Made by a program: the position numbers and the translations under genes. A stretch of DNA of 64,000 nucleotides from the IMG/VR virus record IMGVR_UViG_3300023202_000383, positions 192,508 to 256,507 of that record. The stretch is one strand, 5' to 3'. The notes under the pieces were generated by a model. It was not told the origin of the DNA and searched no databases. It worked only from the letters and a program-made list of their open reading frames with translations. Within the stretch, counting starts at the first letter, position 1. Each line of letters begins with the position of its first letter. Positions 3,860 through 58,719 of the stretch are shown in pieces.

Positions 3860-3943
3860 TGCACGGAGAGGGACTTGAACCCCCAAGCCCTTTCGGGATC
3901 CGAGTTACAGTCGGAGATGCTACCAATTACGCTCTATCCGTGC
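3860..3943 (-). tRNA. tRNA-Tyr(GTA)
   Basis: Cloverleaf GCACGGA/TCCGTGC; anticodon arm TCCGA-CTGTAAC-TCGGA; long variable arm as expected for bacterial Tyr; TTCAAGT T-loop. Confidence 0.93.
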
Positions 3944-5714: not shown

Positions 5715-5797
5715 CACGCCGGGTAGGATTCGAACCTACAGGCCCTTTGCGGGCACGGTTTTGGAGACCGCTTGGCTCACCAATGCACTGCCGACGT
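5715..5797 (-). tRNA. long-variable-arm tRNA with Trp (CCA) anticodon
   Basis: ACGTCGG/CCGGCGT+G73; GCGGT-CTCCAAA-ACCGT; V-arm GCCC-GCAAA-GGGC; T-arm GTAGG-TTCGAAT-CCTAC; weak D-stem and C8. Confidence 0.8.
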
Positions 5798-12718: not shown

Positions 12719-12804
12719 CAGCGGCTGTAGGATTCGAACCTACGTGGGGCTTGTAGCCCTGCAGCTTCAAAGGCTGCCGCGATCGTCCACTCCGCCAAGC
12801 CGCT
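12719..12804 (-). tRNA. long-variable-arm tRNA with Gln (TTG) anticodon
   Basis: AGCGGCT/AGCCGCT+G73; D-arm GCG-GAGTGGACGAT-CGC; GCAGC-CTTTGAA-GCTGC; V-arm GGGCT-ACA-AGCCC; T-arm GTAGG-TTCGAAT-CCTAC. Confidence 0.88.
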
Positions 12805-38253: not shown

Positions 38254-38901
38254 ATGAACGTCGATAAGTTTATGTATTTTTGGCCACCGAGAGCCAAGAC
38301 TTCAGTAAAATTCGGATCTGACCATCAGAAAAAGCTCGCTGATTCGAATTTGTGGGTCGCACAATTCAAGCTCAATGGGCAACGCAACCTGACATATATT
38401 GACCCAGATGGAAATTTTCAATTCTGGAATAGGCACAAAGAGGAACATAGAAGTTACAGTCCGCCCGATTTCCTCAGGGACGAACTTAGAGACGTTCTTG
38501 GAGTCGAACGAGGCAAATGGTCGGTGTTTGATGGTGAACTTCTCCACTTGAAGGATAAAACCATCAAGAACACTATCTATCTGTTTGACGTTCTAGTCTT
38601 TAATGGCAAATTCTTGTTGAATTCCACTTATTTCGATAGACATCAATTGCTTCGGGAAACAACAGGCACCACCGATGCTAGCAGAGACGACATTGCAATC
38701 AAGCCAACTAAGCACGTTTGGGTTGCAGACACATTGCGGCCTAACGAGTGGGACGATGCATGGAAGCATACCGACATTAGCTATATTGAAGGATTTGTAT
38801 TCAAGAAGGTCGATGCTAGATTGAAACCGTGCATCGTGGAGAAGAATAACACTGAGTGGCAAATTCGCTGCCGCAAACCAACCAAGAACTATCAGTTTTA
38901 A
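38254..38901 (+). CDS. ATP-dependent ligase, adenylation domain only
   Basis: QFKLNGQR (KxNG), FDGEL, YLFDVL, EGFVFKK, WQIRCR; no OB domain. Confidence 0.75.
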   Translation: MNVDKFMYFWPPRAKTSVKFGSDHQKKLADSNLWVAQFKLNGQRNLTYIDPDGNFQFWNRHKEEHRSYSPPDFLRDELRDVLGVERGKWSVFDGELLHLKDKTIKNTIYLFDVLVFNGKFLLNSTYFDRHQLLRETTGTTDASRDDIAIKPTKHVWVADTLRPNEWDDAWKHTDISYIEGFVFKKVDARLKPCIVEKNNTEWQIRCRKPTKNYQF

Positions 38902-38910
38902 AGGCATCAA

Positions 38911-39294
38911 ATGTACACAATAGGTAATATTATATACGGCATTCCGCTTACGGAAGAACTTGAAAGAGCATTAGACAAATGCGGCATCGAAGAAGTCGAG
39001 TGTGTCGATTTCAATACGTATTATAGTGGTCACAGCGATTATACACCGGGCTACTTAGGCGTTGAATTGAAGAGATTTGATGAATGCAGCGGGAACATTC
39101 TCCTTAGCGAATTAGATGTTGATCTGTCAGGATCGCAACGGAAAGAAGTGGAGAAATTGGTAAATGCGCTTCCGGAGAGGATCGAAGAATATGTTGATGA
39201 CGACCCTGAAGTTGGCGATGATGTGATGCAGCAAGTAAAACACATATTAAATGGGTTGAAGATCGACAAATACATCATTTGGAGCACCAGTTAA
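38911..39294 (+). CDS. hypothetical protein
   Basis: 127-aa ORF. Confidence 0.65.
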   Translation: MYTIGNIIYGIPLTEELERALDKCGIEEVECVDFNTYYSGHSDYTPGYLGVELKRFDECSGNILLSELDVDLSGSQRKEVEKLVNALPERIEEYVDDDPEVGDDVMQQVKHILNGLKIDKYIIWSTS

Positions 39295-43631: not shown

Positions 43632-44864
43632 ATGCGGGTGAAGCAACTTAAAGAAGCGACCATGTTGTGTCGCGAAGCTGGCGTCACAGCTTTCGTATGG
43701 GGCCACCGTGGCGTTGGTAAGTCCTCGATCATTCGGCAGGTCTGCGATGAACACCAGATGGGATGCATCGACCTTCGATGCAGCCAGCTGGAAGCGTCCG
43801 ACCTCCGTGGTCTCCCCGACCGGATCGACGGTCGTACGGTGTTCTGTCCTCCGGAAGACATGCCGCGTGGCGGTCTGTCGTTCGAGGAATACGCCAAGCG
43901 ACTGGAAGACGATCCGGATAACGCCTACAAGCTGGCAGTCGAACTGCAGCCGCAGATCAACAACGGCATCCTGTTCCTGGACGAGTTGAATCGTGCACAA
44001 GATGACGTGATTCAGGCTGTGTTCCAGCTGGTTCTGGACCGCCGCCTGGGTCAGTACGCCCTGCCTCCGGGCTGGTCGGTGGTCGTCGCGGGCAACTACA
44101 TGGAAGGTTACATGACCAACGGGTTCACCGATGCAGCCTTCATCGATCGATTCTGCCACATGCAGCTGTCGGTCGGTGAGTCGACCCTCGAAGAGTGGGT
44201 CAACTACATGTCCAAGGTCCACGAGCAGGGTGCGACGCAGGTGATCGAATTCGCCTCGCAGAATGTCAAGCATCTCGACGGCGAAGTCAAGGGTGAGATG
44301 GGCTTCTCGGTCCAACCCTCCCGACGTTCGTGGGAAGCGGTTGTCCGTGTCGAAGCCGCCTTCAAGGAATCCAAGCACTCCTACTCCGAAGATACCCGCC
44401 ACGCTGTTTTGGCTGGTTTGCTCGGATGGGAACTGGCGACGTCCTATTCGCGATACAACTGCCCGGTCCGTCCAGACATGGTCATCAAGCAGGGTGTCAA
44501 GTCCCTCGAAGGCAAGCTGGCCAAGCTCAACCGCAACCAGCTGACCGGTCTGATGTGGGGCTTGGCTTCCAAGCTCAAGAACAAGGTGGACGAAGAGAAG
44601 GAAGGCAAGATCGCACTGGACTTCGTCCGGTGGATGTGCAAGCACGCGAACGACAAGGATATCGCAGTGGCGTTCTGTAACGTCATGGTCGGCGGTGACG
44701 AGTTCGTCCGCGAGCGGCACGCGATGATCTCCAACCCGAACATCGCCAACCTGTTCAAGAAGTACCGCAACAAGGATGCCAAGAAGACGTTCATCGACCG
44801 TCTGACGGACGATCCGGAACTGCAGGAGCTGGTGTCCCGAACCGCCTGGGGCAAGGAGAAGTAA
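43632..44864 (+). CDS. MoxR/dynein-related AAA+ ATPase (AAA_5-like)
   Basis: WGHRGVGKS Walker A, DLRGLP, ILFLDELNRA Walker B, AFIDRF, PSRRSWE. Confidence 0.9.
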   Translation: MRVKQLKEATMLCREAGVTAFVWGHRGVGKSSIIRQVCDEHQMGCIDLRCSQLEASDLRGLPDRIDGRTVFCPPEDMPRGGLSFEEYAKRLEDDPDNAYKLAVELQPQINNGILFLDELNRAQDDVIQAVFQLVLDRRLGQYALPPGWSVVVAGNYMEGYMTNGFTDAAFIDRFCHMQLSVGESTLEEWVNYMSKVHEQGATQVIEFASQNVKHLDGEVKGEMGFSVQPSRRSWEAVVRVEAAFKESKHSYSEDTRHAVLAGLLGWELATSYSRYNCPVRPDMVIKQGVKSLEGKLAKLNRNQLTGLMWGLASKLKNKVDEEKEGKIALDFVRWMCKHANDKDIAVAFCNVMVGGDEFVRERHAMISNPNIANLFKKYRNKDAKKTFIDRLTDDPELQELVSRTAWGKEK

Positions 44865-44960: not shown

Positions 44961-45452
44961 ATGGACCGTCATGTTATAATCGACGAGGACCAAGATGTCC
45001 CTCAAACTACCGTAATAGAAGTAACAGACAGCGATTTCGAATCGATCGTTGATGCTATCAGTGGATGCATGGTTGGTGATGATGTGTTCACTATCGATGA
45101 TGCGATCAAAGCCAGAACGACCAGGATGCTTCTGAATCTGCAGTATTCAGAGCATACTGCTTTCATCTTCGACAAGTGGATGATAGAGACGTCGCTACTC
45201 ACTGTCCTACAACAAGGATATAAGTATTCAGAACACCGAGATGCCTAGTGCGCCCAAACCGACATAAACGGCCCGATAGTCGAAGTCAAGCGTATCGTAG
45301 ATGTCGAAATCGTTAGATTTGTCAAGGATGATAATGGCCCGTCGCTCAACAATGACAAGCATTGGCTGGTCAAGAATCCCGAAATCATCATACAAATGGT
45401 AGAGGACTTCATCAATGAGCAACAGCCCGATCATCGCGGAAGCTATTCTTAA
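44961..45452 (+). pseudogene. hypothetical gene with in-frame TAG at 45246-45248
   Basis: Same frame stays open for 67 codons after the TAG, with the same codon style and no independent start near its 5' end. Confidence 0.5.
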
Positions 45453-45702: not shown

Positions 45703-46198
45703 TGTCAAAATAGCAATCTCCGCTATGAGCGGAATGATCGCTAAGATACGCGACAATGACAACAGGTTCAAATCGCAAGAACAGTTCGTGTTGGAATTCG
45801 GTAGGCATTGGGAGCCGATGCCACTTCCTGATGAATTTGAAGCCATGGAGCCAAAACAATGTTTTGGTAATGCATTCAATTTGGTTTTGGCGAACCGAGA
45901 CCTGACATATGTTGAGGGATATGGGATCTCTAACTCAGTTCCGATCCCTATTCAGCATGCCTGGGCTGTTGATAAATCCGGGAATGTTGTTGATCCTACT
46001 TGGGCAAATCCAGAAGAAAGATCATACTTCGGCATCCCGTTTAAATTCGATTTCGTCAGAGACACAGTGATAGAAAAAGAAACGTACGGCGTTATCGATG
46101 ATTGGGCGCGTGGATGGCCTCTATTGACTGAATTGTGGAAAGAACCTGAGAAATGGTTGGAATTACAGGAGATTGAAAATGTATCAGAAAGCACTTGA
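45689..46198 (+). CDS. hypothetical protein with transglutaminase-like Cys/His motif
   Basis: QCFGNAF...YVEGY...PIQHAWAV. Confidence 0.6.
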   Translation: MPKPDVKIAISAMSGMIAKIRDNDNRFKSQEQFVLEFGRHWEPMPLPDEFEAMEPKQCFGNAFNLVLANRDLTYVEGYGISNSVPIPIQHAWAVDKSGNVVDPTWANPEERSYFGIPFKFDFVRDTVIEKETYGVIDDWARGWPLLTELWKEPEKWLELQEIENVSEST

Positions 46199-51013: not shown

Positions 51014-52516
51014 TTACCGCTCGTAGACAAATCTTAACTTCTTGCTACCCCATACCTTCACATAGCCATTTGTTTCAGCGTATTCACGCTCTTTCATTTT
51101 CATCTTCACAGCACGCTGATAGAGCGTTTTCTTATGCATTGTCCACCCATTCTCATCAGTATACCAATAACTTGGTGGTACATCTCCGTCGGGCTTGAAA
51201 TTCAACGACTTATACACAGCACCATCATGATTAAAAGTGGTATCACAATACGATATTATTAACTTGTACTTATCTGGCAGTTTTTTTAGACACCTGCTAA
51301 CAAACCACGACGCGAAATTCTTCTTCTGATAGCGAGGGTGAATACATAACCTAGATAATTCGCGGCATTCTTTCTTCTTATATCTGCCAGTCCTAATATT
51401 GTGACGTACCAACGGTGAAAAAACGCAAACAGCAATCAACTCTTCTTCAAGATAGGCACCATAACAAATTCCGCCTCGACCAGCATCGGATAGGTAATGA
51501 TATTTCGAAAGAAGAAGCCTGTATTCGCTAGCTGGACAGTCATTAATTTCTACATTATTGAAATCGTATTCGACAGTATTCAGTTTAGTAATTCCGAGCC
51601 AATATTTGAGCAATTCGACCACTTTATTATAATTGTGAAATTCATGCTCCCAAATGCATTTCAATTCGTACTGATTTGGGAAGTTATTTGCGACGTATGA
51701 TGCCTTCCGTTTATCATTAGCATGCCCTCGATCTGTAGAATGCCAGTATTCGCCTTGGCATTCTATAAGGAGATCTGGTGCGTTCTGCCTAGGGATGACG
51801 CAATCAAAGCTATATGGCCCGATTTTGGTCTGTAAATCGTCTTGTTTGCTATTGTGCTCTCTGTAATAAGAAATATTTAAGTCGTCTAGGATAGAATAGA
51901 GTGTTTCTTGTATAGATGAGACCTTTGGCATATTATCTCTAGCTAGAGACAAGGACTCGCAGATTTTGGCTCTATATTCGGGATTCTCCCATGACTTTTT
52001 AGTTGCTTCTGATATCTTACGCCTATATTCTTGATTCCCCCACGCCTCTTTGGATACCTGCCCCAAAATTTCTGTCATTTTGTCTCTGTATTTCCCATCC
52101 AACCACCTCTTTTTGCCGAGTTCTGACATCTTTTGTTTAAATTCTGGGGTAACTTTCTTGCGGTTAATCTCTGTCATTCTTTCAGCGAAATCGTCACTCT
52201 GCCTAAAAGCACTCATCCTGTCTCGTAATTCAGGATCATTCCAAATTTCTTTGCTATTGGTTACAATTTTGTTTCTATACCTATCATCCTTCCATGCTTC
52301 TTTTGCTCCTTTCCTAGATGCTTTTCTTTTCTCTGGATCGTTTGCTACACACTTGGCGCATTCCCATGGTATTTGATTTCTTATAACCTCGGATTTCTTG
52401 CGAATGGATTTTGTGCCCTCGCTGCCGCAATTATCACATTCAACGACTACCTTTGGCCTATGTCCAGATAGATCTATTCTATTAAATTTTTCTAGCGTCT
52501 TATTCCAATTTATCAT
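51014..52516 (-). CDS. endonuclease-GNAT fusion (Vsr/DUF559-like PD-(D/E)xK plus Mom-like acetyltransferase)
   Basis: Basic W-repeat N-terminus; YSFDCVIP..LIECQGEYWH..ELKCIWEHE; ELSRLCIHPRYQKKNFASWFVSRC..IISYCDTTFNHDGAVYK. Confidence 0.75.
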   Translation of the reverse strand: MINWNKTLEKFNRIDLSGHRPKVVVECDNCGSEGTKSIRKKSEVIRNQIPWECAKCVANDPEKRKASRKGAKEAWKDDRYRNKIVTNSKEIWNDPELRDRMSAFRQSDDFAERMTEINRKKVTPEFKQKMSELGKKRWLDGKYRDKMTEILGQVSKEAWGNQEYRRKISEATKKSWENPEYRAKICESLSLARDNMPKVSSIQETLYSILDDLNISYYREHNSKQDDLQTKIGPYSFDCVIPRQNAPDLLIECQGEYWHSTDRGHANDKRKASYVANNFPNQYELKCIWEHEFHNYNKVVELLKYWLGITKLNTVEYDFNNVEINDCPASEYRLLLSKYHYLSDAGRGGICYGAYLEEELIAVCVFSPLVRHNIRTGRYKKKECRELSRLCIHPRYQKKNFASWFVSRCLKKLPDKYKLIISYCDTTFNHDGAVYKSLNFKPDGDVPPSYWYTDENGWTMHKKTLYQRAVKMKMKEREYAETNGYVKVWGSKKLRFVYER

Positions 52517-52732
52517 AATTTATTTTTGAGCCGTGATATGGCAATATGGTTATTGTCTTTTAAATACAATATCAGTTGTTGCGCGACAACAAACGCTTCA
52601 CAGCAAGCTAGAAATGCGTCAACACATCAAAAATAACTCATTGGATTCGCGAAGCCGTTTTGTGCCAATTGTTGCCGCCATGCTGCAGCGACACAGCAGC
52701 GTGTGAGGGAACGTCTTTCTGGAGAACATGCT

Positions 52733-54361
52733 ATGATGACACCTGAGGAAAAGTTGGTAGCTGCACGATGTCGTTTGATGACACGTGAGCCATGGTACGG
52801 GCATATGGCCATGATGATCACGTGGAAGAAGTCCGACATGAATTGGGTCGATGATGAAGCGGCCCGATCGATCGGCATTAAGATCGCCAGCACCGGCGAG
52901 ATTACTGCTTACTGGTATCAGGATTGGGTTGAGCGGATGTCGCTCAAGCAGATCTACGGTACTATCGAACACATGATCAATCACCTGGTTCGCCTGCACC
53001 CGGTTCGGGCTGGTGAGCATGAGAAGGCTCCGTGGAACATCGCGACCGACATGGCCGTAAATGGTTCTGCCAACAGCCCCCACATCGGATATAAGGACGA
53101 GAACGGCAAGACCGTCCTCCCTTGCTCATATGATGTGTCCAAGGGAAGCGACACCTGGACAATCCCCAACTACGACGACGCTTTGGTGTTCGCAGACAAG
53201 AAGGGGATCGGCGTCGACAATGTTAAGCCGCACGGCGACAGTCTCGTGTTCGTGCCCAATGACTGGCCTAGTGACGAATCAGCCGAATTCTACTACGAGA
53301 AGTTGATCGAGCAATTCGGTGACGATGGCCAGCAGGGCCAGCAGGGCCAGCAGTGCGATGGTGAAGGCCAGGACCAATGCCAAACGTGCGGTGGCAGCGG
53401 GCAAGCTCCCGACGACGAAGATGGCGACGAAGACCAGCAGGGCCAAGGCCAAGGTCAGGGTCAGGATGATGACCAGCAGGGCCAGGGCCAAGGCCAAGGT
53501 CAGGGTCAGGATGATGACCAGCAGGGCCAGGGTGGTGGCGGTGGCCAACCCCAGGGCGAATGCAGCGACAGCAGCGGTGAAAGTGATGGTCAGGGAAGCG
53601 GCAGCCCGTGCCCCGATTGTCAGGGAACCGGCAAGGAAGGCGGTCAAAGCGGCGGCAACGGCCAGGCCAAGCACAACTACGGCCCATTCCAGAATAACGC
53701 TGTCGACGACCACAGCACGTGGACACAGTCCGATATCAGCCACGACGAGGCACGGCAGCTGGTCCATGATATGGTCAAGGAAGCGACCGACAAGAGCCAG
53801 GGTCACACACCCGGTCACTTGGCACAGGCGATCGACGAACTCAAGAAACCGATCGTCCGGTGGCGTGAAATCCTGCGTCAGATCATCGGCACGCACGTTG
53901 GCAACCGTCGCAAGACGTATGCCCGACGCAACCGCCGATATGATATCTGGGGTATCAAGGGCATCAGCCATCACGCAGCCGCAACCGTGTCGGTGATCAT
54001 CGACACGTCCGGATCAATCGGAACCAAGGAACTGGAACAGTTCTTCGGTGAAATCGAGGCGATCAGTTACCGTGCCAAGGTCAACGTTCTGCAGTGGGAC
54101 CACGCATTCCAGGGCTTCGACCAGTACCGCCGAGGTGACTGGAAGAAGATCACTGCTAATGGACGTGGGGGCACGGATATGGCAGCCCCGGTCAAGTGGT
54201 TAGAAGAGAATGGCCAGGTCGCTGATCTGCAGATTATGCTGACCGATGGCTATTGCAATTGGCCCGCGCCACGTGAGTATCCGATGGTGTTCTGCATCAC
54301 GACCGACAATACTTCGGAACCTGAGTGGGGTGTGTCGATCCGCATGAAGATCACTGAGTGA
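52733..54361 (+). CDS. DUF2201-type metallopeptidase-like plus VWA domain protein (AAA partner)
   Basis: WNIATDMAVN, VDDHSTW, VRWREILR, IIDTSGSI MIDAS, GRGGTD, IMLTDG. Confidence 0.88.
   Translation: MMTPEEKLVAARCRLMTREPWYGHMAMMITWKKSDMNWVDDEAARSIGIKIASTGEITAYWYQDWVERMSLKQIYGTIEHMINHLVRLHPVRAGEHEKAPWNIATDMAVNGSANSPHIGYKDENGKTVLPCSYDVSKGSDTWTIPNYDDALVFADKKGIGVDNVKPHGDSLVFVPNDWPSDESAEFYYEKLIEQFGDDGQQGQQGQQCDGEGQDQCQTCGGSGQAPDDEDGDEDQQGQGQGQGQDDDQQGQGQGQGQGQDDDQQGQGGGGGQPQGECSDSSGESDGQGSGSPCPDCQGTGKEGGQSGGNGQAKHNYGPFQNNAVDDHSTWTQSDISHDEARQLVHDMVKEATDKSQGHTPGHLAQAIDELKKPIVRWREILRQIIGTHVGNRRKTYARRNRRYDIWGIKGISHHAAATVSVIIDTSGSIGTKELEQFFGEIEAISYRAKVNVLQWDHAFQGFDQYRRGDWKKITANGRGGTDMAAPVKWLEENGQVADLQIMLTDGYCNWPAPREYPMVFCITTDNTSEPEWGVSIRMKITE
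53432..53533 (+). repeat. imperfect tandem repeat encoding (DDDQQGQGQGQGQ)n
   Basis: GACCAGCAGGGCCA...GGTCAGGGTCAGGATGAT units repeated. Confidence 0.85.
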
Positions 54362-54403
54362 TATCCATGTGATGACCGCAGCCATGTCGGTCAAATATAT
54401 TTC

Positions 54404-55921
54404 ATGATCGATTGGGAAGCAAGCAAAGCTGAGTTCGGAACCACCATGGGTCTAAAAGGCAATAGACCCATGGTGGTTGTTTTATGTGACAAGTGCAAGT
54501 CTAAAGGATCTATTCGGATTCGCAACAAATCTCTGATCAAAAAGACTGGCGACCGCACATGGCTGTGTAGATCATGCGTGAATAACCAACCTAACAAGAT
54601 AGCAAAACTTAAGAATGCTTCTAAAAAATTATGGGAAAATGATAAGTATAGATCAAAAAATTTAAGCTCAGTCAGAAGTGCAGAAAATCGCAAAAAGCTT
54701 AGCGACAATTGGTATAAAAATATGAAATCAATTGTCGCCAGTGACGAATATAAATCAAAGCAAAGAAAATCATCAATCAAATCATGGCGTGATAGTAAGT
54801 ATGCAAGCAAGATTATCAAGTCATCAACAGAGATGTGGAATAATGCTTCTTTACGTGACAAGATGTTGTCATCTAGAAGAACTGATAAATATAGAGAGAA
54901 TCAGCGTATAAAGGCAATAGAACGGTGGCAAGACCCTAATTATATAAAGAAGCAGGACTCTGCAAAAGCTAGAGCGGTTAGATCACCAGAGAACTTGGCG
55001 AAATTGCGAGCCAACCAGAAAAAAGTGTCATCAATACAAAATATGTTGTATTCAATCCTCGATGATTTAGAAGTTAAATATTATAGAGAATACAATGATA
55101 AAATAGATGATCACGAGGTCAAGATTGGTCCATATAACTTCGACTGTTTGGTGCCACGTGACAACAAGCCAGACTTGCTAATAGAATGTCAGGGCGAATA
55201 CTGGCATTCTATTAGAGAAGGCAGCGATAAAGCTAAAGCATCATATATATCAAACAACCACAGCGATAAGTATGAGCTTAAATATATATGGGAGCATGAA
55301 TTTCATAATAAGAATAGAGTTGTTGAGCTTGTTAAATATTGGTTAGGCATTGCCGCGATTGACTCAATAGAATTCGATTTTGATTCAGTTGAGATAAGAA
55401 AATGTCCACCAAAAGATTATAAACTTTTGCTTGGCAAATATCATTATCTTCCAACAGCAGGTCGCGGTGGCATCGCTTTTGGTGCATATTTGGAGTCCGG
55501 GTTAATAGCTGTATGTATTTTTTCTCCGATGCCTCGGCAAAACATGCCATATAATAATAAATCGCATAGAGAATTGTCTAGGTTATGTATTCACCCTCGC
55601 TACCAGAAGAAGAATTTTGCGTCGTGGTTTGTGTCGCGGTGTATCAAATTGCTACCGACAAAATACAAAACAATAATATCATATTGTGATACTACATTCA
55701 ACCATGATGGGGCGGTCTATAAAGCATGCAATTTCAAATTGGATGGTGAAGTTAAGCCAGATTATTGGTATGCTAGCAAAAGCGGCTGGATTATGCATAA
55801 AAGAACAATGTATGGGCATGCAACAAAGATGAAGAAAAATGAATCCGATTATGCCAAAGAGATGGGCTACAAGAAAATATGGGGCAGCAAGAAATTAAGA
55901 TTTGTTTTTGACAGATCATGA
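54404..55921 (+). CDS. endonuclease-GNAT fusion, paralog of 51014-52516
   Basis: YNFDCLVP..LIECQGEYWH..IWEHE; ELSRLCIHPRYQKKNFASWFVSRC..IISYCDTTFNHDGAVYK identical to the paralog. Confidence 0.75.
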   Translation: MIDWEASKAEFGTTMGLKGNRPMVVVLCDKCKSKGSIRIRNKSLIKKTGDRTWLCRSCVNNQPNKIAKLKNASKKLWENDKYRSKNLSSVRSAENRKKLSDNWYKNMKSIVASDEYKSKQRKSSIKSWRDSKYASKIIKSSTEMWNNASLRDKMLSSRRTDKYRENQRIKAIERWQDPNYIKKQDSAKARAVRSPENLAKLRANQKKVSSIQNMLYSILDDLEVKYYREYNDKIDDHEVKIGPYNFDCLVPRDNKPDLLIECQGEYWHSIREGSDKAKASYISNNHSDKYELKYIWEHEFHNKNRVVELVKYWLGIAAIDSIEFDFDSVEIRKCPPKDYKLLLGKYHYLPTAGRGGIAFGAYLESGLIAVCIFSPMPRQNMPYNNKSHRELSRLCIHPRYQKKNFASWFVSRCIKLLPTKYKTIISYCDTTFNHDGAVYKACNFKLDGEVKPDYWYASKSGWIMHKRTMYGHATKMKKNESDYAKEMGYKKIWGSKKLRFVFDRS

Positions 55922-56417: not shown

Positions 56418-56816
56418 ATGAAGACTCCAGAGAACCATGGGGCCGGATCGGCAATGGTCCGGCCCTGTGTGTTTAACGAAATGACATACTGCAATAGAGA
56501 ATGCTTCCAGTTCCTCATAACCCATCGTGTCTATGAATCGCTTGTATGCAGATATAATTGGTTTATAAAACATTCCACAGTGAATTTTGATGGTGAGAAA
56601 TGTGATAGATTCGATGTTTATATGGGCCTAGATGTCGGTGTAGTCAGAATAACGAGAAATAAAGTATCGATAAATGGCATAACAGACCAATATGATATAA
56701 GCGATCCAAAATTTAACCCAGATAATTTTGCCGCAGCTATCATACATAACGTCGTAGAGCAACGATGCCGCCGGTTGAGACTATCAGATGGCTTGGCACA
56801 CAACCTTTACGCGTGA
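56418..56816 (+). CDS. hypothetical protein, DPxF(D/N)P family
   Basis: YDISDPKFNPDNFAAAI. Confidence 0.6.
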   Translation: MKTPENHGAGSAMVRPCVFNEMTYCNRECFQFLITHRVYESLVCRYNWFIKHSTVNFDGEKCDRFDVYMGLDVGVVRITRNKVSINGITDQYDISDPKFNPDNFAAAIIHNVVEQRCRRLRLSDGLAHNLYA

Positions 56817-57070
56817 TTAATAGGCTCCGCGATTGGGAATTGTTGTCGAATTTCAATAGAACCATAGTTATAAATTATGTGATTGATAATGATGAACTAA
56901 TGGATTTGGATGATATGTCCAGATATATGAAAGTGTCAAAGAGAACAATTCACAAATGGATAAAATCTGGTATAATTCCTAACCCAGACATGTCAGTGAG
57001 CAGGACCAAGCGTTGGTTCAAATCAACCATCATAAAAATGATGAAAGGTAACAAATGCAAAGCACAGTAA
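56765..57070 (+). CDS. excisionase/AlpA-like HTH protein
   Basis: LMDLDDMSRYMKVSKRTIHKWIKSGIIP...RWFKS; true start probably near 56879-56900. Confidence 0.7.
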   Translation: MPPVETIRWLGTQPLRVINRLRDWELLSNFNRTIVINYVIDNDELMDLDDMSRYMKVSKRTIHKWIKSGIIPNPDMSVSRTKRWFKSTIIKMMKGNKCKAQ

Positions 57071-58719
57071 ATCCTACCGTACAAAAGTTGGGCATCAAAT
57101 CACCATATCGTTTACTCGAAAAGATGTATGAGGATTGTGCGCAAAATCAATTTATACGTGAATTTACAGAAAATGCAATAGAAGCGATCGATGGCATGCA
57201 AAGCGAAATATATTGGGGCTATATTAAAATCGGCAGTGTGAATAAGTTATTTGTGGCAGATAACGGGCCAGGTATGACTGGAGATGAGCTATTTCAATAT
57301 ATTGGTAATCTGGCGGCCTCTAAGGTTATTCGATCTCAGCATGGTGTGGGTGCCAAAATATCGGCAATAGTAGAAAATAGACTTGGATTGATATACGTGT
57401 CGTGAAGCAATCCAGAAAACCCATCTGCAATAAAATTTTATGTCAATTCGAGCGGCGAAATACTTACACGTAAAGTAGATGTACCAGATTGGGCGTATGA
57501 CAAGAAGTTCGATTTTATTGAAAGTAGCGGCACGATAGTCGTGTTTCTAGGTAATAGCGGCAATGAGGACACGACCAAGACCAGCAAAAATGGTCAAGAT
57601 TGGATATCAGACTACATCGCTAGTCGGTATTATAAGCTACCGCCAAATGTTTCCGTAAAGCACAAAACATACTCTGCGCGAAAGAAGCGTACTGCATATC
57701 CGCAGTCATACTACCTCAATAAATATCATTCAAGCAAGGGGAAAGTTAAGGTCAGCAATGCTGACGTCCATTGGTGGATACTGAAAAACGTCGACAGAAG
57801 ATCCTATACTAGAGGCCATGCAGGAATTTTGCATGACGATGAATTATACGTGCGGTTTGGTGGGCATGATGGTCATAAAATTCTTAAGGGATTTGGGATA
57901 TTTTATGGCTACAAAAATGTAGTGATATATGTAGAACCACATGACGCGAAGCCGACTATATCACGCGGCGATCTTGGTGTTATCGACACCAATGGTAATC
58001 GAGTGAATGCACAAGAGTTGATGCAGACGTGGCAATCAGAATTTTACCAGAAGATGCCACGCAAGCTGAAGAAATTCGTGAAGTCAAAGTCAAAGTCAAA
58101 GAATACCAAGAAATACAGCAAGTTTGATGATAAGTTCTTTGAATTCACCAAACGATTTACCAAGATGTTCTTGGCAGGCAAATCTCCCACCATCTTTGGC
58201 AACAGGCTGGTCTCAAATAAAACGAAAACGCAGGGTGGTACCGGCGGGGGTGGCGGTGGCGGTGGCGGGGGCGGCAATAACAAAACCAATTCTGCTCATA
58301 CACATGGCAATGGCTCTAGCAGGAGAGGTCTTAAGATTCCTAATATCACTTTTGTCAATGCAGACAATGACCCGGATAATTCTGATTTAAAGGGCAGTTT
58401 GGGCCGATACGTACCATCTGTCGACATGATTTATATAAATATGGATTATGAATGGATCAATCACATCATAGATGATGTGCAGAGGAATTTCGATGACGGC
58501 CCAGAATTTAGAGACAGGGTTGAAGAATTCACTATGGCGGTTCTAAGGGAATATTATACTAGTTATGTATGGTACAATACTCTCCCTGGCCGCGATTCAG
58601 ATTCCAACTGGTTCGAAGACAAAGCATTTACAGATGCATTCGGTGCCGCCATAGTCAATAGTGTTGGTGATATTAAGAACAGAGTGAGCGTCAGTCTCAA
58701 ACACAGGCCAATAATATGA
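57055..58719 (+). pseudogene. GHKL (Hsp90/MORC-like) ATPase split by in-frame TGA at 57403-57405
   Basis: IREFTENAIEA, VADNGPGM, HGVGAK before the stop; the frame stays open after it, contains SGTIVVFLG, and runs into ORF 57541-58719. Confidence 0.7.

What the first reader, a model, noticed from the sequence alone, without database searches (positions are those of the whole stretch)
57055..58719. GHKL ATPase split by one TGA inside the ATP-binding fold
Seen: LIYVS*SNPE. The 45 codons after the stop are open and include the final GHKL strand (SGTIVVFLG), so neither half can form the domain alone. Joined length is 554 codons. From memory, homologs have Trp at this position (GLIYxSW). Inference: a TGG-to-TGA lesion, or conditional UGA readthrough by the odd CCA type II tRNA. 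If the latter, the unusual Trp and Gln tRNAs would gate a set of stop-interrupted genes (with 45246 TAG and 46257 TAA). An excisionase-like HTH gene overlaps its start.
Basis: partly seen in the sequence, partly recalled or inferred. Interest (0 to 1): 0.6.

Follow-up and report, generated by a model that had tools for sequence, protein, structure and literature searches.

The report
Phage GHKL ATPase gene broken by TGA
A large phage carries a MORC/Hsp90-like ATPase gene cut by a single TGA stop where relatives have tryptophan, most likely an ordinary recent nonsense mutation and not a tRNA-controlled switch.

Summary
The frame 57055-58719 is one gene of 554 codons, and codon 117 (57403-57405) is TGA. 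A family profile matches it end to end as a single copy (E 1e-110, one TGA inside). The stop falls in the motif G-[LIV]-x-Y-x-S-W. Trp holds that column in 130 of 147 homologues and in 79 of 79 bacterial genome copies, all of them intact.

The family is large and unnamed, about 600 aa, with a GHKL plus S5-like fold resembling Hsp90, MORC, MutL and rIIA. It is found in many phyla, mostly on mobile DNA, with no conserved neighbour.

The genome uses the standard code. ORFs cover 92.6% of it, and TGA ends 129 of 336 ORFs, this gene included. There is no UCA tRNA and no RNA structure after the stop. The same TGA allele is on six contigs from at least three metagenome samples, so it is not a sequencing error. 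No intact allele or close relative was found.

Best reading: a young TGG-to-TGA lesion, with at most a few percent background read-through by tRNA-Trp. A TGA lesion would land on Trp 24-46% of the time by chance. The idea of a tRNA-gated set of interrupted genes is not supported. Only one other candidate exists (TAG at 45246, an ORFan). The phage's aberrant tRNA-Trp(CCA) keeps a read-through reading possible but unproven.

The parts
56765..57070 (+). Small HTH_17 (excisionase/AlpA-like) DNA-binding gene that overlaps the ATPase start by 16 nt.
   Evidence: Pfam HTH_17 E 1.3e-6, 29.0 bits, above the cutoff of 27. PHROGs hits to DNA-binding and excisionase families.
57055..57402 (+). N-terminal 116 codons of the GHKL ATPase. 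They carry motif I (E36..N40), motif II (D69-x-G-x-G) and motif III (G97-x-G-A-K).
   Evidence: 24 of 28 family-conserved columns are retained.
57403..57405 (+). In-frame TGA (codon 117) at the conserved Trp of the G-[LIV]-x-Y-x-S-W strand. The local context is UCG UGA AGC.
   Evidence: Present on six contigs from at least three samples.
57406..57540 (+). 45 start-less codons after the stop. They encode further beta-strands of the ATP-binding fold, including the G159-T160 motif.
   Evidence: Coding score 0.29. Aligned to strands E133-184 of the P0002 model.
57541..58719 (+). The rest of the frame. Metagenome annotators call it a 392-aa ORF starting at GTG. It holds the S5-like middle domain, a poly-Gly linker (about 58234-58275) and a helical C-terminal domain, and it ends in TGA.
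   Evidence: The profile match runs over model positions 4-562 of 609 across both parts. 36 of 52 conserved columns are retained.
5715..5797 (-). Phage tRNA-Trp(CCA) with a 13-nt variable arm and a degenerate D stem. Any link to the TGA is unproven.
   Evidence: ARAGORN. Rfam tRNA 37.3 bits, with mismatched 10:25 and 11:24 pairs and a G27.U43 top pair.

Best explanation
The locus is a single gene for a roughly 553-residue GHKL (Bergerat-fold) ATPase with an S5-like middle domain. It is a divergent phage member of a large, unnamed family carried on mobile elements and prophages. By fold it belongs with ATP-driven dimerising clamps of the Hsp90/MORC/MutL/rIIA kind. That functional reading is inferred from the fold and has not been shown.

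In this phage the conserved Trp codon 117 has become TGA, which takes one G-to-A transition from TGG. Under the standard code that this genome uses, translation ends there. The product is a 116-residue fragment that lacks more than half of the ATP-binding beta-sheet, so the gene is functionally knocked out or strongly knocked down. No second lesion is present and the catalytic motifs are intact, so the mutation is evolutionarily young. It is the consensus allele in every sample that contains this phage. A small amount of full-length protein, of the order of a few percent, could still arise from ordinary near-cognate decoding of UGA by tRNA-Trp. That would be a by-product of the lesion, not a designed switch.
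For: One gene: the family profile hits the genome once, over model positions 4-562 of 609, E 1.3e-110, with one TGA inside.

Stop at a conserved Trp: W in 130 of 147 homologues and in 79 of 79 bacterial genome copies, with 80 of 80 of those ORFs intact.

Standard code: ORFs cover 92.6% of the genome under table 11. Stops are TAA 134, TGA 129 and TAG 73. The median in-frame extension after TGA is 9 codons, the same as for the other stops. This gene's own terminator is also TGA.

No decoding apparatus: none of the 35 tRNAs has anticodon UCA, and there is no significant RNA structure after the stop (z = +0.9).

Not an artefact: the same TGA is on six contigs from JGI samples 3300023202, 3300023214 and 3300022719 and from assemblies of SRR23862438 and SRR23862439. 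One of these contigs differs from the window by a nearby SNP.

Chance expectation: 24-46% of single-step TGA lesions in this gene would come from TGG.

Fold and family: profile against PDB sequences gives GRP94/TRAP1/Topo VI-B at E 2e-8. The AlphaFold model of homologue P0002 has pLDDT 89. Foldseek matches TRAP1/Hsp90, MORC2/3 and MutL-N at E 1e-11 to 1e-9, and phage rIIA and topoisomerase ATPases at about 1e-10.

The fragment is non-functional: W lies at the end of strand 124-130 of the model, and strands 133-184 follow it. The next in-frame start lies beyond the G-T motif.
Against: The 437 codons after the stop are perfectly open and retain motif IV and most conserved columns. That is also what a gene still under selection through read-through would look like.

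The stop sits exactly on Trp, the residue that near-cognate decoding of UGA would restore.

No intact (TGG) allele was found in any sample. A 554-aa allele would have fallen within the length range of the word search. The broken allele is therefore not visibly a minority variant.

The phage encodes its own aberrant tRNA-Trp(CCA) and an ochre-type suppressor tRNA, so it may alter how stop codons are decoded.

The population is almost clonal (0-1 SNP per several kb), so fixation of the allele across samples carries little weight either way.
Confidence: 0.66

Rival explanations
1. Functional leaky stop. The TGA is retained because low-level decoding as Trp keeps a potentially costly ATPase at a few percent of normal output. 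The decoder would be host tRNA-Trp, boosted by the phage's own tRNA-Trp(CCA). That tRNA has an altered hinge region that might favour a C:A wobble.
For: The stop is on a conserved Trp. The downstream frame and the motifs are intact. The phage tRNA-Trp(CCA) has mismatched 10:25 and 11:24 pairs, C24, a G27.U43 top pair in the anticodon stem and a long variable arm next to positions 44/45. Changes at positions 9, 24, 27 and 43 of E. coli tRNA-Trp(CCA) are reported to give UGA read-through (PMC13092985). In E. coli, UGA read-through is about 2-4% and rises when tRNA-Trp is over-expressed (PMC10570021). The base after the stop is A, which I recall as a leaky context for UGA in E. coli; this is from memory and was not checked.
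Against: The same tRNA would also read through the 129 genes that end in TGA, and those show no extra back-up stops. It is one gene in 336. There is no stimulatory RNA structure. No relatives are available to show that the stop is conserved. The anticodon stem still has 5 pairs. The tRNA scores only 37 bits and may be poorly functional. Its G73 and long variable arm are also the elements SerRS is reported to recognise (PMC7609411), so it might not carry Trp at all.
Confidence: 0.2
2. Two functional polypeptides. A 116-aa N-fragment and a 392-aa protein re-initiated at GTG 57541 either act separately or reassemble.
For: Metagenome gene callers annotate exactly these two ORFs.
Against: The 45 codons between the stop and GTG score as coding but would belong to neither product. 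They contain strands of the ATP-binding sheet and the G-T motif. No convincing Shine-Dalgarno sequence precedes 57541 (read directly from the sequence). None of 80 bacterial genome homologues is split this way.
Confidence: 0.05
3. Assembly or sequencing error. The true codon is TGG.
For: It is a single-base difference from the expected codon.
Against: The identical TGA appears on six contigs from at least three JGI samples and in independent Logan assemblies.
Confidence: 0.02
4. Genome-wide TGA reassignment (code 4 or 25), or selenocysteine insertion at this codon.
For: The TGA aligns with Trp, as it would in organisms that use code 4.
Against: TGA terminates 129 of 336 ORFs, with short extensions, and coding density is 92.6% under table 11. 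There is no tRNA(UCA) or tRNA-Sec in the genome (one Ser tRNA scores below the tRNA-Sec cutoff). There is no SECIS-like hairpin. Homologues have Trp at this column, not Cys.
Confidence: 0.01

Closest known systems
Prokaryotic MORC / paraMORC GHKL+S5 ATPases of restriction-modification and conflict systems (Iyer, Abhiman and Aravind 2008, PMC2292703)
   Same: Both have a GHKL ATP-binding domain followed by an S5-like domain and a family-specific C-terminal extension. Both occur in mobile or defence regions, sometimes beside a cytosine methylase and Vsr (locus L005) or in restriction-modification islands (P0002 context). Foldseek matches MORC2/3 and MutL-N.
   Different: There is no conserved helicase, nuclease or methylase partner; neighbours differ in all 80 loci. 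Pfam MORC models do not hit. No PADLOC model hits, and that library includes the GHL-ATPase defence protein Tiamat, mentioned in a 2026 preprint. Which paraMORC family it belongs to, if any, was not tested.
Phage T4 rIIA-type proteins (N-terminal GHKL ATPase with a variable C-terminus; PMC7824862)
   Same: Both are phage-borne GHKL ATPases in T4-like or jumbo phages. Structure search of the viral library returns many rIIA proteins at E about 1e-10. This genome has T4-like gp32 and gp15 genes.
   Different: No PHROG family, rIIA included, matches either half. TM-scores are only about 0.3, which is generic GHKL+S5 similarity. No rIIB-like partner was seen.
Hsp90 / TRAP1 / GRP94
   Same: These are the best matches by sequence profile (E 2e-8) and by fold (E 1e-11) over the N-terminal and middle domains.
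   Different: Identity is only 11-15% and TM about 0.35. The C-terminal domain differs. NCBIfam HtpG scores 15-21 bits against a cutoff of 371.
Near-cognate UGA read-through by tRNA-Trp(CCA), including the Hirsh G24A, A9C and 4-bp anticodon-stem variants (PMC13092985, PMC10570021)
   Same: A UGA at a Trp position, together with a tRNA-Trp(CCA) altered at the hinge (positions 24, 25, 27:43 and the variable region).
   Different: No function has been shown here. The anticodon stem keeps 5 pairs (G.U at the top). The long variable arm has no precedent among those variants. Only one gene is affected.
Stop-codon-recoded phages with suppressor tRNAs
   Same: A large phage with many tRNAs, including a suppressor-type tRNA (anticodon UUA).
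   Different: Recoded phages have hundreds of in-frame TAG or TGA codons and fragmented ORFs under table 11. Here coding density is 92.6% and all three stops terminate genes. The suppressor matches TAA, not TGA.

Membership tests
GHKL (Bergerat-fold) ATPase superfamily | Motifs I (E-x3-N), II (D-x-G-x-G), III (G-x-x-G-x-G or G-x-G-A-K type lid) and IV (G-T) in the right order. | tested here: met
   E36/N40, D69-N-G-P-G, G97-V-G-A-K and G159-T160 are present and align with columns that are at least 90% conserved. Profile against PDB sequences gives E 2e-8. Pfam HATPase_c_3 alone is sub-threshold.
GHKL (Bergerat-fold) ATPase superfamily | An intact, continuous ATP-binding domain. | tested here: not met
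   TGA at codon 117 separates motifs I-III from motif IV and from at least four strands of the sheet.
MORC/paraMORC-type GHKL+S5 module | An S5-fold (transducer) domain directly after the GHKL domain. | tested here: met
   The model of homologue P0002 aligns over 400-460 columns with MORC3, MORC2, MutL LN40 and the Hsp90 N-terminal plus middle domains. The phage protein aligns with the family profile through that region. The phage protein itself was not folded.
MORC/paraMORC-type GHKL+S5 module | Conserved operon partners (SF2 helicase, nuclease, methylase). | tested here: not met
   No neighbour cluster larger than 2 among 80 loci. Contexts are heterogeneous.
Programmed stop-codon read-through / recoding site | The stop is conserved at the same position in related genomes. 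| not testable with these tools
   No close relatives in the phage, IMG/VR, metagenome or genome collections. All distant homologues have a sense codon, mostly Trp.
Programmed stop-codon read-through / recoding site | A stimulatory downstream RNA structure or a dedicated suppressor tRNA. | tested here: not met
   The fold of 57395-57480 is no better than shuffled sequence (z = +0.93). There is no UCA-anticodon tRNA.
TGA-to-Trp genetic code (table 4) | Many in-frame TGA codons, with TGA not used as a terminator. | tested here: not met
   129 of 336 ORFs end in TGA, with a median extension of 9 codons. There is one TGA-interrupted gene.
Selenoprotein gene | A SECIS hairpin after the UGA, and Cys or Sec in homologues. 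| tested here: not met
   No hairpin. Homologues have Trp.
T4 rIIA family | Sequence membership (PHROG/Pfam rIIA models). | tested here: not met
   No PHROG hit at E <= 0.1 for either half. There is only fold-level similarity.

The most novel reading that the evidence does not exclude
The phage's structurally aberrant tRNA-Trp(CCA) has a long variable arm, an unpaired 10:25/11:24 hinge and a G27.U43 top pair. It could be a natural phage-encoded Hirsh-like opal suppressor. Once expressed, it would decode UGA as Trp and so switch on the GHKL ATPase only during infection, possibly in concert with the phage's UUA suppressor tRNA acting on the TAG/TAA-interrupted ORF at 45246.
Probability: 0.08. 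Interest if true: 0.75.

Novelty: new member of a known kind. Interest (0 to 1): 0.3.

Why it matters
As it stands, this is an ordinary premature stop in an accessory phage gene. It is useful mainly as an annotation correction: the two ORFs called in public metagenomes (116 aa and 392 aa) are one broken gene.

Two by-products have more value. First, the gene belongs to a very large, unnamed, standalone GHKL+S5 ATPase family: 2225 clusters at 50% identity, found across many bacterial phyla and in prophages. It has no Pfam, PHROG or PADLOC model and deserves characterisation as a candidate conflict or defence protein.

Second, the phage's tRNA set is unusual. It includes type II-like Trp, Gln and Cys tRNAs and a UUA suppressor. 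If the tRNA-Trp(CCA) really reads UGA, it would be a natural phage example of suppression through changes outside the anticodon, and this gene would be its obvious reporter.

Tried and rejected

Close relatives, to test whether the stop is conserved: blastn and tblastn against phage records; protein-pattern scans of IMG/VR with the ATPase and with the downstream gene; a metagenome scan that returned only a 31%-identical relative; and tRNA-pattern scans of viral and genome collections. All were empty.

Recurrent breaks at the same site: four family representatives start at a Met just after the Trp. They turned out to be a contig end, an N-gap and a frameshift, each with the Trp codon intact.

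Other interrupted genes: a genome-wide scan of in-frame extensions. The extension past the TGA at 46196 is not coding-like. The 46257 TAA is followed by a ribosome-binding site and an ATG. Ten same-frame TAA gene pairs showed no domain spanning the stop. The ligase-like ORF 38254-38901 and the following ORF look like separate genes. The TAG at 45246 remains a candidate but has no homologues.

Family naming: PADLOC, PHROGs and NCBIfam gave nothing usable. Cluster names are all 'hypothetical protein'.

A blastn of the phage tRNA-Trp against E. coli genomes found nothing, so the comparison with E. coli tRNA-Trp rests on the positions named in PMC13092985.

I read the gene through only with X at the break. 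I did not name code 4, because the genome does not show it. For the same reason I did not look up a hypothetical Trp-containing full-length sequence.

Full report
**What is there.** The window is the last 64 kb of a 256.5-kb IMG/VR virus record. The record is 41% GC and carries 35 tRNA genes, T4-like gp32 and gp15 genes and two Mom-like DNA-modification genes near the locus. On the + strand, an ORF runs from ATG 57055 to TGA 57403-57405 and encodes 116 residues ending ...GLIYVS. The same frame then continues without a stop for 437 codons to TGA 58717-58719. The first ATG, GTG or TTG after the internal stop is GTG 57541, 45 codons downstream. Public metagenome annotations call two genes here, of 116 aa and 392 aa. 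A codon-usage score trained on this genome's long ORFs gives the 45 start-less codons 0.29, against 0.21 +/- 0.09 for real coding chunks and -0.56 for off-frame chunks. They are therefore coding sequence that neither annotated ORF accounts for. An HTH_17 gene (56765-57070) overlaps the start.

**It is one gene, and the stop replaces a conserved Trp.** A word search with the 437-aa part found two full-length relatives of about 610 aa. Both read G-[VL]-[IV]-Y-x-S-W-K-D-G where the phage reads G-L-I-Y-V-S-stop-S-N-P. A profile search of 1.84 billion cluster representatives found 2225 family members (707 at E <= 1e-30), nearly all 580-650 aa. In an alignment of 151 of them, the column opposite the stop is Trp in 130 of 147 residues. 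The rest are K, F, Y or L, and the flanking G, Y and S are more than 90% conserved. A scan of species-representative bacterial genomes kept 80 loci from at least ten phyla. All 80 have an intact ORF, and 79 of the 79 that match the motif have Trp. Searched against the phage genome, the family profile gives a single match covering model positions 4-562 of 609, E 1.3e-110, with one TGA inside. Four representatives begin at a Met just after the Trp, which hinted at recurrent breaks. They turned out to be a contig end, an N-gap and a frameshift, each with the Trp intact. The TGA is unique to this phage.

**What the protein is.** Pfam gives only sub-threshold HATPase_c and HATPase_c_3 hits. PHROGs, PADLOC and NCBIfam give nothing useful. 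The family profile matches GRP94, TRAP1, Hsp90 and Topo VI-B N-domains among PDB sequences at E 2e-8 to 2e-6. An AlphaFold model of homologue P0002, built on 121 sequences, has pLDDT 89 and pTM 0.82. Foldseek aligns 400-460 columns of it with TRAP1/Hsp90, MORC2/3 and MutL LN40 (E 1e-11 to 1e-9), and with phage rIIA and topoisomerase ATPase subunits in the viral library. The protein is thus a GHKL domain plus an S5-like transducer domain, then a disordered linker (poly-Gly in the phage) and a helical C-terminal domain. The phage copy keeps motifs I-IV. It retains 24 of 28 conserved columns before the stop and 36 of 52 after it, against a family mean of 92%. It is a divergent member, and its losses lie mainly in the C-terminal domain. 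Source databases name the family only 'hypothetical protein'. ESM Atlas neighbours are HATPase-bearing clusters whose commonest known phylum is Uroviricota. Genomic contexts are integrative elements and defence or restriction-modification islands: an integrase with ParA; Vsr with a cytosine methylase; an E1/E2 pair beside Eco57I- and XamI-type genes; and an SMC-like ATPase. No neighbour is conserved. The closest described concept is the prokaryotic MORC/paraMORC radiation (PMC2292703). Membership of a particular paraMORC family was not tested. That the protein acts as an ATP-driven dimerising clamp on DNA or protein complexes is inferred from the fold alone.

**What the stop does.** In the model, the Trp ends strand 124-130, and strands 133-141, 148-151, 164-166 and 179-184 of the same sheet follow it. 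The 116-aa product therefore cannot form the ATP-binding domain. A product started at GTG 57541 would lack motifs I-IV altogether.

**Is TGA read as sense here?** Under table 11, a simple greedy ORF set of 336 ORFs covers 92.6% of the genome. TAA, TGA and TAG end 134, 129 and 73 of them. The in-frame extension past the stop has a median of 9-10 codons for all three. The ATPase gene itself ends in TGA. No tRNA in the genome has anticodon UCA. RNA folding of 57395-57480 is no better than shuffled sequence (z = +0.93), so there is no SECIS-like or read-through-stimulating hairpin. Reassignment and selenocysteine insertion are excluded.

**Is there a set of interrupted genes?** I scored every start-less in-frame extension of 18 codons or more beyond a predicted stop. 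Two stand out: this TGA (0.29) and the TAG at 45246 (0.23-0.26). Everything else scores 0.21 or less over short stretches. The 45246 case (ORF 44961-45248 plus 67 codons) may be a second nonsense-interrupted gene, but it has no homologues at all, so the residue that was replaced cannot be known. The extension after the TGA at 46196 is not coding-like. The 46257 TAA precedes a GGAGAGGGG ribosome-binding site and an ATG. The genome does encode a well-formed tRNA with anticodon UUA (genome c[132690-132764], 55.9 bits). I therefore joined ten same-frame gene pairs separated by TAA, with X at the stop, and scanned Pfam. No domain spans a junction. One or two interrupted genes with different stop codons among 336 is what sporadic mutation gives. 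It is not a regulon.

**Is it real, and how old?** The 116-aa ORF with its TGA is on six contigs: JGI 3300023202, 3300023214 and 3300022719, and Logan assemblies of SRR23862438 and SRR23862439. All read ...TCG TGA AGC.... The contig from 3300022719 differs from the window by one nearby SNP. A second contig from that sample has two synonymous changes in the poly-Gly tract. Sequencing error is therefore excluded. The population is almost clonal, so the repeated observation says little about selection. No intact 554-aa allele appeared in the word search, although its length range covered that size. The lack of any second lesion in 437 codons means the mutation is young or the frame is still under selection. 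The data cannot separate these two.

**How much does 'stop at Trp' say?** I counted single-step routes to TGA in this gene: TGG 10 (counting the mutated codon itself as a former TGG), CGA 5, and 27 transversion routes. A random TGA lesion comes from Trp 24% of the time with transition/transversion ratio kappa = 1, 35% with kappa = 2, and 46% with kappa = 4. The coincidence therefore favours the read-through idea by a factor of only two to four.

**The tRNA.** Infernal places tRNA-Trp(CCA) at 5715-5797 on the minus strand, at 37.3 bits against 55-74 for most of the phage's other tRNAs. It has A1:U72, G73, a normal CUCCAAA anticodon loop and a 13-nt variable arm. Position 8 is C. The 10:25 (G.A) and 11:24 (U.C) pairs are mismatched, and G27.U43 tops a 5-pair anticodon stem. 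In E. coli tRNA-Trp(CCA), changes at A9, G24, C27 and G43, which lie in the same hinge, are reported to permit UGA decoding (PMC13092985). Over-expressing normal tRNA-Trp raises the 2-4% background UGA read-through (PMC10570021). A few percent of full-length ATPase is therefore plausible whatever the origin of the stop, and a stronger effect of the phage tRNA cannot be excluded. Against a designed switch, the same tRNA would act on 129 ordinary TGA terminators. G73 together with a long variable arm are the elements SerRS is reported to recognise (PMC7609411), so the amino acid this tRNA carries is uncertain.

**Verdict.** A real, single, in-frame TGA at a conserved Trp codon of a divergent MORC/Hsp90-like GHKL ATPase gene in a large T4-like phage.
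- A young TGG-to-TGA nonsense mutation with, at most, background read-through: about 0.66.
- A retained leaky stop that exploits tRNA-Trp: about 0.2.
- Two functional pieces: about 0.05.
- Assembly or sequencing error, or reassignment/selenocysteine: 0.03 or less together.

Throughout, the gene was read through only with X at the break, and no alternative genetic code was named.

Noticed in passing
outside the window: genome C1 132690-132764, minus strand (locus L010:3692-3764): A well-formed 73-75-nt tRNA with anticodon UUA (ochre-suppressor type), scoring 55.9 bits on the Rfam tRNA model. It lies on the strand opposite to the surrounding tRNA cluster. Its acceptor stem is the same as that of the phage tRNA-Arg(ACG). 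TAA is the commonest stop in the genome (134 of 336 ORFs).
   Followed up: partly
window 5715-5797 (-), 12719-12804 (-); genome 154024-154108 (+): The only Trp(CCA), Gln(UUG) and Cys(GCA) tRNAs of the phage all have long, type II-like variable arms. The Trp and Gln tRNAs share an identical T arm with the phage tRNA-Leu(CAA), which suggests descent from a type II tRNA. G73 plus a long arm raises the question of which amino acid they carry.
   Followed up: partly
window 44961-45449 (+): A 95-aa ORF ends in TAG at 45246-45248. The next 49 start-less codons in the same frame score as coding (0.23-0.26). This may be a second nonsense-interrupted gene, but it is an ORFan with no homologues in 5.8 billion clusters.
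   Followed up: partly
genome C1 143995-144067 (+): ARAGORN reports a tRNA with an irregular anticodon loop ('tg', Gln or Pro). Infernal scores it 62.9 bits as a tRNA.
   Followed up: no
window 3862-3941 (-): The phage tRNA-Tyr(GTA) scores only 26.9 bits, below the Rfam cutoff. It ends in G73 and has a variable arm nearly identical to that of the tRNA-Trp.
   Followed up: no
window 51014-55921: Two Mom-like DNA-modification genes (51014-52516 on the minus strand, 54404-55921 on the plus strand) flank a DUF2201/VWA-type gene (about 52703-54361). A MoxR-like AAA ATPase lies at 43632-44864. Together these make a conflict and DNA-modification neighbourhood around the ATPase gene.
   Followed up: no
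window 38254-39294 (+): A 215-aa ORF carries only the nucleotidyltransferase domain of an ATP-dependent DNA ligase. A TAA follows it, then a 127-130-aa ORF in the same frame. The downstream part has its own ribosome-binding site and ATG and does not look like a ligase OB domain, so these are probably two genes.
   Followed up: partly
window 58234-58275 (+): A poly-Gly tract (13 Gly) sits in the linker of the ATPase. A contig from sample 3300022719 has two synonymous GGT-to-GGC differences here.
   Followed up: no
beyond the window end (locus L002:12939-13179): The 301-kb JGI contig continues past the end of the IMG/VR record with a ClpP-like protease gene. The 332-kb contig ends exactly at the window end. 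The 'provirus' call and the 70% completeness estimate may reflect trimming of a larger phage genome.
   Followed up: no
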